Positions 3,151-42,779 of a stretch of DNA of 64,000 bases are shown here, piece by piece. Origin of the DNA: Gracilinanus agilis (taxonomy: Eukaryota). Position numbers and translations under genes: made by a program. How positions within the stretch are numbered: position 1 is the stretch's first letter; the number at the start of each line of letters is the position of its first letter. Location: the NCBI RefSeq assembly GCF_016433145.1, contig NC_058135.1:174658486-174722485 (forward strand). Reading direction: 5' to 3'. Below the pieces are notes generated by a model. It saw only the letters and a program-made list of their open reading frames with translations. It made no database searches and had not been told where the DNA came from.

Positions 3151-4626
3151 CAGTAAAGTGGCTGTCTTGCCTTTTCCCGTACAATACTATTTCTGTATTT
3201 TGTTACCTTTACCAATTTGCTGGGTTAGGAGTAAAACTTTAGAATTATTTGGATCTGTACATTTCCTTTATTATCAGTGATTTGAGAAGTCTTTTAATTA
3301 GCTGTTTATAATTTGCCATTTTTCTTTTTGAGAACAGTTTATTTGTGTCCTTCAGCTACTCTATTAGGGAATTGCTTTTAGTCTTATATGTAATTGTGCT
3401 CATCTTCTATAAATTTTAAATATCAGATCATTATCAGGGAAATTTGATGCAAAGATATTCTCCCCAAATGACAGCTTCCCCTCTTGCACTCCTTTTGCAA
3501 ATGTCAGAGCTCTTCGTTTTGAATACTTTTTAAAGATTCCAACCACAAATAAATCAAATAAGATTAAGGTTAGGGGTTGGTAGAATTCCTTTGGCATGAC
3601 TCAAGAGTCAGATTTAGAGCTGCAAGGGAGGTCATTTAGTCCAACATTTTCCTTTTATAGAAGAAGAAACTGAAAGATATAAAATTCAATACCCAACAGG
3701 TAATAAGTGGTCAATACCACATTCAAATCTAGGCCCTCTGTGCCCTGGTCATATTCCCCAGTTCCCTTCTATACTCATAGATACTTGTTTGTAATCTTCC
3801 CTGTAACTATCTCTAGATCTCATTCCCTCTGTGGGGAAAGGGACTATCTGGTCTTCTAGGTCTATATCTAGTCCACTCTCTTTATTTTAGACATAAGAAA
3901 ACTGACATCAGAGGAAGGAAGTGGCCATCTCTATTAAGTAACAAAGCTGTACTTTAGACCCAACCACTCTCAGCTCTTTCCACAGCATCGCTCAAGTGAA
4001 AAGACTGTCTGCTTCCAGAGAGCAGGAACTGGTCTTGGTGCTGCTGCTGCTGCTGCCGCCAGTGGTTTTCATGTTTTGTTTTTGCCGTTCTTTGATCCCT
4101 AGCACTTAGCATAGTGCCTGGCCCATAAGAAGCTTTTGATAAATAGGAGTTGGCTGACTAAAGGCTTTCAACTTTCAAAATCTTGGAAATTTATTCTAAG
4201 TAGGAAAAATTAACCTGCAGAAGGAAAACCCTATGATTCATGAAAGTTACTCTCTCTCAATGCCCTGCATTGGTTTGTTGTGTGTGTGTATGTGGTTTTT
4301 TTTGTCTGTAATAGACCATAGTTTTAAAATCTTATCTCATTTTAAAACCTTTTCTACTGTTAATCACACACTACTCAGTTCCTTCTCCTCTGAGGGGTGA
4401 AGATTGAATTATTAATCTATGTACTTGTGTGTTCCTATTAACTAATTGATTGCTGATTCCATAGTTTTATTAGTGATTGCATTCTCTAGCAGTATTTGTA
4501 ATGATCAGATCTTCTCTAGAGACCATATAATAAAGTGATCAGGAGTCCAAAATGAGTGGGAGTCAGGGTTCAAGCATTCTCGCTCTCTCTCTGATATAGA
4601 TTGGTACCATTTGGACTTGGTATGAT

Positions 4627-41403: not shown

Positions 41404-41612
41404 CAGACATATGGAGTGATCATTCATTTCAGACGGATCCAGATTTGCCACCTGGATGGAAAAAAATTTGTGACATTGCTGGGATCTATTACTGGCATAT
41501 ACCAACGGGAACCACCCAGTGGGAACGTCCTGTGTCCATCCCAGCAGATCTTCAGGGTTCTAGAAAAGGGTCCTTTAGTTCTGTAACTCCATCTCCCACC
41601 CCAGAGAATGAG
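41404..41612 (+). CDS. APBB2: APBB2 coding exon with the WW domain: (A)[69 protein letters not shown]
   Basis: Pyrimidine tract then TAG/CAG acceptor at 41401-41406; donor GAG|GTAAAT at 41613; 209 nt, phase 1 to phase 0; FE65-family WW signature LPPGW...[13 protein letters not shown]. Confidence 0.97.
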
Positions 41613-41822
41613 GTAAATTTTTTTAATAGTTTGTTTGGTTGACAATAACATGTCACACTTCTTTTAACCACTCACTCCTATTCAAACAGGTCAATGAGGT
41701 AAGCTTTAGTTACAGTATTTATTGGATTTAAAGTGTGAATAGTGTTTCATTTTGTGAGTAGAATTAATGTCCATTTCCCACAGTTTTTGTTCTTAATGAC
41801 TCTTAGTCTTTATGAACTAGGG

Positions 41823-41998
41823 CAGTGATGAGTAAACTATGCCCCCACCCAGGCCATAGTTTGTCCATCACTGCCTTAAGCAATTCCCTAATCACTGCGC
41901 TCCCACATCCAGATATAGTGATTAGGGAATTGCTTAAGGCAGTGATGGGCAAACTATGGCCTGGATCTGGCCCACAGGGAATAGTTTGCCCATCACTG
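41823..41998. mobile_element. Composite palindromic hAT MITE with four TIR copies
   Basis: Perfect 8-bp TSD AACTAGGG at 41815-41822 and 41999-42006; TIR CAGTGATGGGCAAACTAT at 41823 (+, 2 mismatches), 41856-41873 (-), 41940 (+), 41981-41998 (-). Confidence 0.9.
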
Positions 41999-42779
41999 AA
42001 CTAGGGTAATAGATACAATGAATAAAGTGAAGAATGTTATTCTATTCTGTAGATACAGGTTGTAGTCAGACTTTACATGCCAACTAAAGTTTCTTGGCTA
42101 GATATTTTATAAGTATTGTGACCCTTATTAACCTTTGGTTGCTAGAGGTAGTAGGTGGACTCAGTCAATGAGATAATACTTAAGATTCCTTAAGACCTAA
42201 TTTTTGACAAAATATTAAAAATCCTAAGGTTTTCAACATGATAGAAGTGAAAATATTTTGGCAGTTATGTTTAGTTACATAACCTTTTAGTGTTCAACTT
42301 CAGTTTGATCTTTAGTGAAATGGCGTGAAGAATTTTTTTTAAATTGAAGAATGATACATACATGAAAAATTACTGAAAAAAAAGCCCTGCTATGAGAGGC
42401 AGTACATGATAGTGAATAGAAAAATAGTTTTGGAATCAAGAAGACCTTGAGGGTAGGAATGTTTCATTCAAAAACATTCAAATGTTTCATGATTTCTCAG
42501 AACCTTGGACAGCACCTGGCACAGAGTAGGTATTTAGTAATTGTAATCACTACTACCACATTTTTTAGTTATTTGACTGACAGTCTTAAATCTTTTTTAC
42601 AACCATACAAGATTGCCATCCTTCAGAAGGTCTCCCAAAAAGGATATCTCCTGATTTTCCCTTGGCAACAAGGTTTATATTGTGATAACAATTGGATAGT
42701 GAACATTCTCTTTTTAATTTGTTTCATCTCTAAGTTGTATCATAGTATAGTTTGGAAATTCAATCTCTTGAGGGAAATA

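What the first reader, a model, noticed from the sequence alone, without database searches (positions are those of the whole stretch)
41815..42006. Composite four-TIR hAT element apparently mobilised as one unit
Seen: two micro-MITEs (41823-41873, 51 bp; 41940-41998, 59 bp), each little more than a pair of CAGTGATGGGCAAACTAT TIRs, joined by a 66-nt palindromic spacer. Only the outer ends carry a direct 8-bp TSD (AACTAGGG); the inner ends abut inverted copies of one 8-mer (CCTTAAGC / GCTTAAGG). Established: hAT transposases make 8-bp TSDs and cut via hairpins on flanking DNA, whose repair can leave inverted duplications. Inference: a fold-back or alternative-transposition product that captured flanking DNA and then jumped as a composite, a small eukaryotic analogue of a composite transposon. 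I cannot tell whether it is already catalogued among opossum hAT/OposCharlie families.
Basis: partly seen in the sequence, partly recalled or inferred. Interest (0 to 1): 0.75.

Follow-up and report, generated by a model that had tools for sequence, protein, structure and literature searches.

The report
Four-ended fold-back hAT MITE copy
This 176-base palindrome is one ordinary copy of a very abundant, lineage-specific mini jumping gene (a hAT MITE) whose whole family carries four transposon ends instead of two; it landed here as a single piece, since a related species has the clean empty site.

Summary
An 8-bp duplication (AACTAGGG) brackets a 176-bp near-palindrome made of two micro-units (51 and 59 bp), each ending in CAGTGATGGGCAAACTAT-type repeats, joined by a 66-bp spacer.

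It inserted as one unit. A contig from a relative (about 6% diverged in the flanks) crosses the site and lacks exactly the element plus one copy of the duplication.

It is not a one-off composite. In contigs of the window's own species, 4,709 contigs match the element. The spacer arm is about as abundant as the units, roughly 10^4 arm-equivalents against single-copy depth. Hundreds of contigs end at the same outer tip and continue into unrelated flanks whose plurality letters read TCTAGA, the Charlie-type hAT target. Two relatives hold almost none of it.

The spacer centre is homologous to a unit centre, so at least part of the spacer is element-derived, not captured host DNA.

Each unit is about 41 nt of a Charlie-type 5' end plus an 18-nt repeat, and the two units are mirror images. 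I infer that the founder arose by fold-back (inverted) duplication.

This scan flagged the same layout at least four times elsewhere in this genome. Dfam and Repbase could not be queried, so whether the family is catalogued is untested. This copy is ordinary and the interest is low to moderate.

The parts
41815..41822 (.). Left copy of the 8-bp target-site duplication, AACTAGGG
   Evidence: The relative's contig has only one copy (joint 41810>41997).
41823..41873 (+). Micro-unit 1 (51 bp). The outer repeat is 41823-41840 (2 mismatches) and the inner repeat is 41856-41873 (1 mismatch). The Charlie-type 5' end faces outward. It is shortened by 8 nt compared with unit 2.
41874..41939 (.). Spacer: 23-nt arms (41874-41896 and 41917-41939) around a 20-nt loop. 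It is family sequence and differs from the family majority at 41897, 41898, 41901 and 41915.
   Evidence: depth 284,255 on the right arm against 27.2 for single copy; centre homologous to a unit centre.
41940..41998 (-). Micro-unit 2 (59 bp). The inner repeat is 41940-41957 and the outer repeat is 41981-41998, both perfect. Read on the minus strand, it is about 41 nt of a Charlie-type 5' end followed by an 18-nt repeat.
   Evidence: 25 of 36 identities to the OC1_Das 5' end; no majority difference from the family.
41999..42006 (.). Right copy of the 8-bp target-site duplication, AACTAGGG
41849..41964 (.). Core hairpin: 48-nt arms, 98% complementary, with a 20-nt loop. It spans the inner repeats and the spacer.
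   Evidence: I1; DNA -72.9 and RNA -129.4 kcal/mol for the whole element.

Best explanation
The stretch is one copy of a high-copy, lineage-specific, non-autonomous hAT (Charlie-type) MITE family. The family layout is a fold-back: unit, spacer, mirror-image unit.

Shown:
- A hAT transposase supplied in trans cut at the two outermost tips and pasted the whole 176 bp into an intron, 210 nt after a WW-domain exon of an APBB/FE65-family gene.
- The insertion duplicated 8 bp of a CTAG-centred target.
- It happened after the split from a relative that is about 6% diverged.

Inferred:
- Each 59-bp unit is an extreme deletion or snap-back derivative: about 41 nt of a 5' end plus an 18-nt terminal repeat.
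- The family founder arose when one unit plus about 33 nt next to it was copied back on itself as an inverted duplication, for example by template switching during gap repair or replication.
- That event gave two outward-facing 5'-type ends and two inward-facing repeats.
- The inner repeats may then act as extra transposase-binding sites, as subterminal repeats do.

The copy is now a decayed relic, but it would form a long hairpin in the host pre-mRNA.
For: - Structure and significance.
- Empty site: in run X4, an 1,817-nt contig covers 41640-41810 and then 41997-42440 with one letter between. That leaves a single ATGAACTAGGG and no footprint. The flanks show 37 substitutions in 577 aligned nt (tables 5, 5c and 8).
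- Abundance: in run X14 (0.96 of words, own-locus contig with 0 differences), 4,709 contigs lie on the element.
- Depth: summed depth is 284,255 on the spacer right arm and 399,134-442,130 on unit 2, against 27.2 in the flanks (table 2).
- Outer tip: 402 contigs end at 41998 and continue into unrelated sequence whose plurality letters begin GTCTAGAG (table 7).
- Other copies: contigs cover 41849-41998, and back-joints 4197x>41856 show further copies with a full unit followed by the spacer (tables 5c and 8).
- Relatives: only 9 contigs in X4 and 6 in X1 lie on the stretch.
- End sequence: the unit matches the OC1_Das 5' end at 25 of 36 positions, with 0 of 20,000 shuffles as good.
- TIR: 15 of 16 positions match the published hAT-HT1_AC TIR. 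Its MITE has the TSD consensus NTCTAGAN (PMC3014272 Table 1).
- Spacer: its centre matches a unit centre, score 27 against 11.9 +/- 2.0 for shuffles, 0 of 2,000 as good.
- Scan notes: the same layout was noted on other pieces of this genome, and one follow-up reached the same reading.
- Mechanism precedent: hAT transposase BED domains bind subterminal repeats beyond the TIR (PMC10368747).
Against: - No other full-length copy could be read base by base, because the tool returns only contig coordinates. That other copies hold all four repeats under their own TSDs is pieced together from overlapping contigs and unchecked scan notes.
- Summed contig depth is only a rough proxy for copy number.
- The founder mechanism is inferred from anatomy alone.
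- All differences from the family majority lie in the left arm and loop (0 of 82 nt in the right arm). This may mean subfamily structure that I could not resolve.
- The TSD matches only the central CTAG of NTCTAGAN.
- No autonomous partner was found.
Confidence: 0.68

Rival explanations
1. Macrotransposon founder. Two micro-MITEs inserted independently 66 bp apart in host DNA. The transposase then used the two outermost ends (alternative transposition), so the pair plus the captured host spacer became a new mobile family.
For: - Ac/Ds macrotransposons of this logic are documented in maize (PMC3260210 and PMC9910405).
- Only the outer ends carry the TSD.
- A 15-mer of the spacer arm is identical to an L1 ORF2-like fragment at 3363-3377, E = 0.003. 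The arms could therefore be host-derived.
Against: - The palindrome is continuous through the inner repeats and spacer, 47 of 48 positions.
- The units are mirror images in their non-palindromic centres.
- The inner flanks show no TSDs of their own.
- A host spacer that happens to be palindromic and centred exactly between two independent insertions is improbable.
- The spacer centre is homologous to a unit centre.
Confidence: 0.12
2. No special founder event. This is an ordinary internal-deletion MITE of an autonomous hAT whose subterminal regions already contain inverted copies of the terminal repeat, so the four 'ends' are inherited transposase-binding repeats.
For: - hAT ends commonly hold subterminal repeats needed for transposition (PMC10368747).
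- Near-fully palindromic hAT MITEs are published: hAT-N1_AC is 135 bp with 57-bp TIRs (PMC3014272).
- A longer family in this genome shares the terminal about 34 nt (loose ends before 41961 and 41965).
Against: - The inner repeats are complete 18-nt copies that include the CAG tip.
- The related longer family diverges right after about 34 nt and does not carry the spacer.
- The two ends of the related autonomous OC1_Das share only about 16 nt. That is unlike an 80-nt mirror.
Confidence: 0.15
3. Local event. A simple micro-MITE inserted here and was later duplicated in place, so the layout is private to this locus. Alternatively, the structure is an assembly artefact.
For: Only one copy is present in the 64-kb window.
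Against: - Thousands of contigs from the same species carry the spacer and the junctions.
- Independent contigs of X14 reproduce the right junction with 0 differences.
- The relative lacks exactly the element plus one TSD.
- The same layout was noted on other chromosomal pieces.
Confidence: 0.02

Closest known systems
Charlie-type hAT elements spread by horizontal transfer in tetrapods: hAT-HT1 (Anolis hAT-HT1_AC and its MITE hAT-HT1N1_AC) and OC1/OposCharlie1 (OC1_Das and the 192-bp OC1_Das_NA)
   Same: - 8-bp TSD and YARNG tip.
- The TIR matches hAT-HT1_AC at 15 of 16 positions.
- The first 36 nt match OC1_Das at 25 of 36 in the same register, including GGGCCAGAT.
- The target consensus is NTCTAGAN, against the plurality flank GTCTAGAG here.
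- Like those families, this one is a burst of thousands of short non-autonomous copies confined to one lineage.
   Different: - The sequence is a different family from OC1.
- Any link to a hAT-HT1-like transposase is untested.
- Those MITEs are simple internal-deletion derivatives with two ends, not mirror-image doubles with four.
Near-fully palindromic hAT MITEs, for example hAT-N1_AC of Anolis (135 bp with 57-bp TIRs; PMC3014272 Table 1)
   Same: A short, high-copy hAT MITE that is almost entirely one long inverted repeat and forms a hairpin.
   Different: Here each long arm itself contains a complete small hairpin unit with its own pair of terminal repeats. The palindrome is therefore nested.
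Maize Ac/Ds macrotransposons, double Ds and reversed-ends transposition
   Same: - Several hAT ends lie close together.
- The outermost pair is used, so everything between moves as one piece with one 8-bp TSD (PMC3260210 and PMC9910405).
- The inner pair sits in reversed orientation, as in the substrates of chromosome-breaking alternative transposition.
   Different: - The maize cases are kilobase-scale, individually arisen and rare.
- This is a 176-196-bp unit amplified to thousands of copies, and it most likely formed by inverted duplication, not by two separate insertions.
- No rearrangement linked to it was examined.

Membership tests
hAT superfamily (non-autonomous member) | 8-bp target-site duplication | tested here: met
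   AACTAGGG lies on both sides. The relative has a single copy at the empty site.
hAT superfamily (non-autonomous member) | Short terminal inverted repeats with a YARNG tip | tested here: met
   The tip reads CAGTG at all four repeats. The YARNG motif is as stated in PMC3014272.
hAT superfamily (non-autonomous member) | Mobilised by a hAT (DDE, BED-finger) transposase that shares its ends | not testable with these tools
   There is no autonomous copy in the window, and the genome cannot be searched. The only evidence is end similarity to OC1_Das (25 of 36) and hAT-HT1_AC (15 of 16).
Charlie-type hAT (MER1 / OposCharlie-like group) | Target preference NTCTAGAN | tested here: met
   The plurality flank after the outer tip in 402 contigs begins GTCTAGAG, though overall agreement is only 0.42. 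This copy's own TSD keeps only the central CTAG.
MITE | Short, non-coding, high copy number, homogeneous, with TIRs and TSD | tested here: met
   The element is 176 bp with no ORF. 4,709 matching contigs were found, of which 565 are at least 99% alike, 1,140 are 95-99%, 1,822 are 90-95% and 1,182 are under 90%. Depth is about 10^4 times single copy.
Composite transposon or macrotransposon (two independent elements plus captured DNA) | The two flanking elements arose as separate insertions, and the DNA between them is unrelated host sequence | tested here: inconclusive
   Against: the palindrome is continuous, the units are mirror images, and the spacer centre is element-like. For: a 15-mer is shared with an L1 fragment. 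The founder locus was not available.
A catalogued repeat consensus (Dfam or Repbase) | An existing consensus with the same layout | not testable with these tools
   No repeat library is available. A full-text search for the TIR string returned 0 papers, and Gentles et al. 2007 is not held.

The most novel reading that the evidence does not exclude
The four-ended layout is not a passive curiosity but the reason this family succeeded. Doubling complete end sequences on each arm would recruit more transposase.

A second consequence follows. Thousands of reversed inner end pairs only 66 bp apart would have been substrates for reversed-ends transposition, as with maize double Ds. They could then have driven breakage and rearrangement in this marsupial lineage while the transposase was active.

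This would be the first vertebrate family founded by a fold-back or macrotransposon-like event and amplified genome-wide.
Probability: 0.12. Interest if true: 0.6.

Novelty: new member of a known kind. Interest (0 to 1): 0.3.

Why it matters
For this locus, very little. It is a decayed relic in an intron.

For the family there are three points of interest.
- It shows how a mini-transposon can be built by repeated folding-back of a transposon end and still spread to thousands of sites in one lineage.
- It places thousands of long perfect hairpins in genes. Here the hairpin is 210 nt after a splice donor and folds as RNA at -129 kcal/mol. Such hairpins are raw material for small RNAs or RNA editing.
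- Its inward-facing end pairs resemble the substrates of chromosome-breaking alternative transposition in maize.

The burst is absent from two related species, so it could also serve as a clade marker.

Tried and rejected
**Searches that found nothing**
- Exact-pattern scans for the unit/spacer junction found nothing in metagenome contigs or viral contigs.
- A scan for a solo unit found nothing in metagenome contigs.
- Scans for the TIR found nothing in bacterial and archaeal genome contigs or viral contigs.
- No other copy could therefore be fetched as sequence.
- A literature search for the TIR string returned 0 papers.
- The opossum TE paper (Gentles 2007) is not held.

**Matches judged not meaningful**
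- Rfam gave only sub-threshold matches typical of any long hairpin. The best was MIR9471 at 54 bits against a gathering score of 150. This is not a known RNA family.
- 'Composite MITE' and 'four TIRs' in the literature turned out to mean other things.
- The findings look-up by sequence was blank.

**Readings considered and rejected**
- Two independent nested insertions: neither unit has its own TSD.
- In-place duplication private to this locus: contradicted by the family data.
- Precise excision in the relative: there is no footprint and the family is nearly absent there.
- SPIN as parent: the published SPIN TIR, CAGYGGTTCTCAACCT, differs.

- The N runs were left untouched.
- The WW exon was sent only to the local Pfam and PDB sequence scans.

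Full report
**1. Observation**

- The duplication AACTAGGG lies at 41815-41822 and again at 41999-42006.
- Between the two copies are a 51-bp unit (41823-41873), a 66-bp spacer (41874-41939) and a 59-bp unit (41940-41998).
- The 18-mer CAGTGATGGGCAAACTAT occurs four times, in alternating orientation, with 2, 1, 0 and 0 mismatches. It occurs nowhere else in the window. Chance expectation is 0.12, and 0 of 100 shuffles reached four matches.
- The spacer arm occurs only here, once on each strand.
- The inner flanks are CCTTAAGC and GCTTAAGG.

Two refinements apply.
- The spacer has 23-nt perfect arms around a 20-nt loop, so it is not a full palindrome.
- The palindrome does not stop at the spacer edges. 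It runs 48 nt on each side at 98% (41849-41896 and 41917-41964) and, with an 8-nt indel and a few mismatches, out to the tips.

The whole stretch folds as single-stranded DNA at -72.9 kcal/mol (z = -13.1). As RNA it folds at -129.4 kcal/mol (z = -15.5).

**2. Did it insert as one piece?**

Yes. Contigs of four public runs were laid on 41640-42440 at 80% likeness or more.

Run X4 is from organism B, a relative. Its flanks differ from the window by 37 substitutions in 577 aligned nt, plus small indels. One 1,817-nt contig from X4 covers 41640-41810 and then continues at 41997-42440, with a single letter A in between.

Read against the window, this is ...GTCTT-ATGAACTAGGGTAAT.... That is a single copy of AACTAGGG, with neither the element nor a footprint. 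What is missing is exactly the element plus one copy of the duplication.

A palindrome-induced assembly collapse would not remove precisely that. hAT excision normally leaves a footprint. The family is also almost absent from that species (see section 3). Insertion in the window's lineage after the split is therefore the simple reading.

**3. Is it a one-off?**

No. Run X14 holds 0.96 of the sampled words, and its contig over 41975-42440 is identical to the window. It is therefore the same species, and possibly the source sample.

| Measure in X14 | Value |
|---|---|
| Contigs lying on the stretch, essentially all on the element | 4,709 |
| Of these, at least 99% alike | 565 |
| 95-99% alike | 1,140 |
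| 90-95% alike | 1,822 |
| Under 90% alike | 1,182 |
| Summed word depth, 41910-41936 (spacer right arm) | 284,255 |
| Summed word depth, unit 2 (two bins) | 399,134 and 442,130 |
| Word depth, unique flank | 27.2 |

The depths correspond to roughly 10^4 arm-equivalents. The tool warns that this is not a true copy number, so I take only the order of magnitude, thousands.

Depth is lower on the left arm. This is expected, because palindromic matches are placed once, on the better-preserved right arm.

The spacer is nearly as abundant as the units, so it is family sequence and not DNA unique to this locus.

Further evidence from the same call:
- 402 contigs end their match exactly at 41998 and continue into mutually unrelated, A/T-rich sequence.
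- A further 213 contigs run 5-7 nt further before diverging.
- No comparable cluster of loose ends is listed at 41940. Solo 59-bp units therefore do not seem to be the common form.
- Contigs covering 41849/41850-41998 show other copies with inner repeat, spacer and full unit.
- Back-joints run from 41970-41973 to 41856 with 3-8 letters between. They show other copies with a full unit followed by the spacer.

Relatives X4 (organism B) and X1 (organism A) have similar-sized contig sets (about 3 Gb). They gave only 9 and 6 laid contigs. The few that lie on the element itself are 34-40-nt weak matches to a repeat plus the junction. The burst is therefore lineage-specific.

**4. What kind of transposon is it?**
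- It has an 8-bp TSD and CAGTG tips, which fit the YARNG motif.
- The plurality letters just outside the tip in the 402 contigs begin GTCTAGAG. This fits the NTCTAGAN target consensus published for Charlie-type hAT MITEs (PMC3014272 Table 1). This copy's own TSD keeps only the central CTAG.
- The 16-nt tip matches the published hAT-HT1_AC TIR (CAGTGATGGSSAACCT) at 15 of 16 positions.
- Read on the minus strand, the first 36 nt of unit 2 match the 5' end of OC1_Das-Auto at 25 of 36 positions without gaps. The shared block GGGCCAGAT sits at the same offset. None of 20,000 shuffles did as well.
- The published SPIN TIR is different.

Each 59-bp unit is therefore about 41 nt of a Charlie-type 5' end joined to an 18-nt terminal repeat. 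Unit 1 has that 5'-type end on the left and unit 2 has it on the right, so the units are mirror images with the 5'-type ends outward.

A second, longer family in this genome shares only the terminal about 34 nt and then diverges. This shows as loose ends before 41961 and 41965 with the consensus ...GGATAGAACATTTCAGGGGGCCAC. It may be the roughly 192-bp hAT MITE noted elsewhere in this scan. I did not test that.

**5. The spacer**

I corrected the four positions where this copy departs from the family majority.

| Position | This copy | Family majority | Share of depth |
|---|---|---|---|
| 41897 | G | A | 97% |
| 41898 | C | T | 62% |
| 41901 | T | C | 96% |
| 41915 | A | G | 94% |

After this correction, the spacer centre reads ACTATGCCCCCACATCCAG. 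That matches the centre of unit 1 with a score of 27, against 11.9 +/- 2.0 for shuffles, and 0 of 2,000 shuffles did as well. At least the middle of the spacer is therefore transposon-derived.

The 20-nt arms have no such match. Their only lead is a 15-mer (ATTAGGGAATTGCTT) identical to 3363-3377, inside an L1 ORF2-like fragment, with E = 0.003. No second L1 copy in the window covers that segment, so the lead could not be tested.

**6. Mechanism**

Shown: cut-and-paste of the whole unit at the outer tips, by a transposase that must have been supplied in trans.

Inferred, on how the founder arose:
- The mirror symmetry runs through the units and spacer alike.
- Neither unit has its own TSD.
- The palindromes are nested: 18-nt arms inside 80-nt arms.

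These features fit repeated snap-back, or inverted duplication, of a transposon end plus adjacent sequence. This could happen by template switching during gap repair or replication. They fit less well with two independent micro-MITE insertions flanking a host spacer that happened to be palindromic.

The macrotransposon idea has good precedent in maize (PMC3260210 and PMC9910405). I keep it as a rival at about 0.12.

A third possibility, at about 0.15, is that the layout was inherited from the subterminal repeats of the autonomous parent. hAT transposases do bind subterminal repeats through BED domains (PMC10368747). The same fact suggests why inner repeat copies might help mobilisation.

**7. 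Age and state**
- The right arm (82 nt) shows no majority difference from the family.
- The left arm and loop carry about six private substitutions and an 8-nt deletion, roughly 3-5% overall.
- That is similar to the per-lineage divergence from organism B.
- The copy is old and there is no sign of current mobility.

**8. Context**

The element lies on the sense strand of an intron, 210 nt after the donor of a 209-nt exon (41404-41612). The exon encodes a WW domain (PF00397, E = 2.7e-9). Its best solved relatives are the WW domains of APBB1 and APBB3. No RNA data were examined.

**9. Known or new?**
- This scan noted the same layout at least four times on other pieces of this genome. One follow-up reached the same conclusion. 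Those notes are unchecked by me.
- A family of this size in a sequenced mammal is very likely already present as a consensus in repeat libraries. I could not query Dfam or Repbase, and I found no paper describing the layout.
- I therefore class this copy as a new member of a known kind (palindromic hAT MITE). The four-ended architecture is a modest, possibly undescribed, variation.

**10. Limits**
- Only the one read-laying run returns coordinates, not sequences. No second full copy was inspected base by base.
- The organism's name is coded.
- The founder event is inference.

Noticed in passing
window 41404-41612 (+): A 209-nt exon with AG acceptor and GT donor encodes a WW domain (PF00397, E = 2.7e-9). 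It is closest to the APBB1 and APBB3 (FE65 family) WW domains. The MITE hairpin sits 210 nt into the downstream intron.
   Followed up: partly
window 41604-41616, 41690-41702, 42164-42176: The donor-site string AATGAGGTAA recurs 86 nt downstream of the real donor as GTCAATGAGGTAAGC. It recurs again, one base different, at 42164. The first looks like a strong decoy 5' splice site between the exon and the hairpin.
   Followed up: no
window 3280-3520 (+), especially 3363-3377: An L1 ORF2 C-terminal-like fragment (frame translation ...FEKSFN.LFIICHFSF...ILNIRSLSGKFDAKIF...) contains a 15-mer identical to the MITE spacer arm (E = 0.003). It is a possible source of the spacer arms, or a chance match.
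   Followed up: partly
window 41961-41998 (family level, from contigs of run X14): A second, longer repeat family shares only the terminal about 34 nt of the unit. It continues inward as ...GGATAGAACATTTCAGGGGGCCAC (270 contigs). It may be the roughly 192-bp hAT MITE with a CTCF-like motif noted elsewhere in this scan.
   Followed up: no
window 41710 and 41734: The relative (organism B) lacks 9 and 19 nt here compared with the window. These are small indels in the intron just upstream of the insertion site.
   Followed up: no
window 41846-41883 and 41927-41966: Organisms A and B each hold a few low-depth contigs with 34-40-nt, 82-88% matches to an inner repeat plus the first bases of the spacer. 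They may be relics of an older relative of the family, or chance extensions.
   Followed up: no
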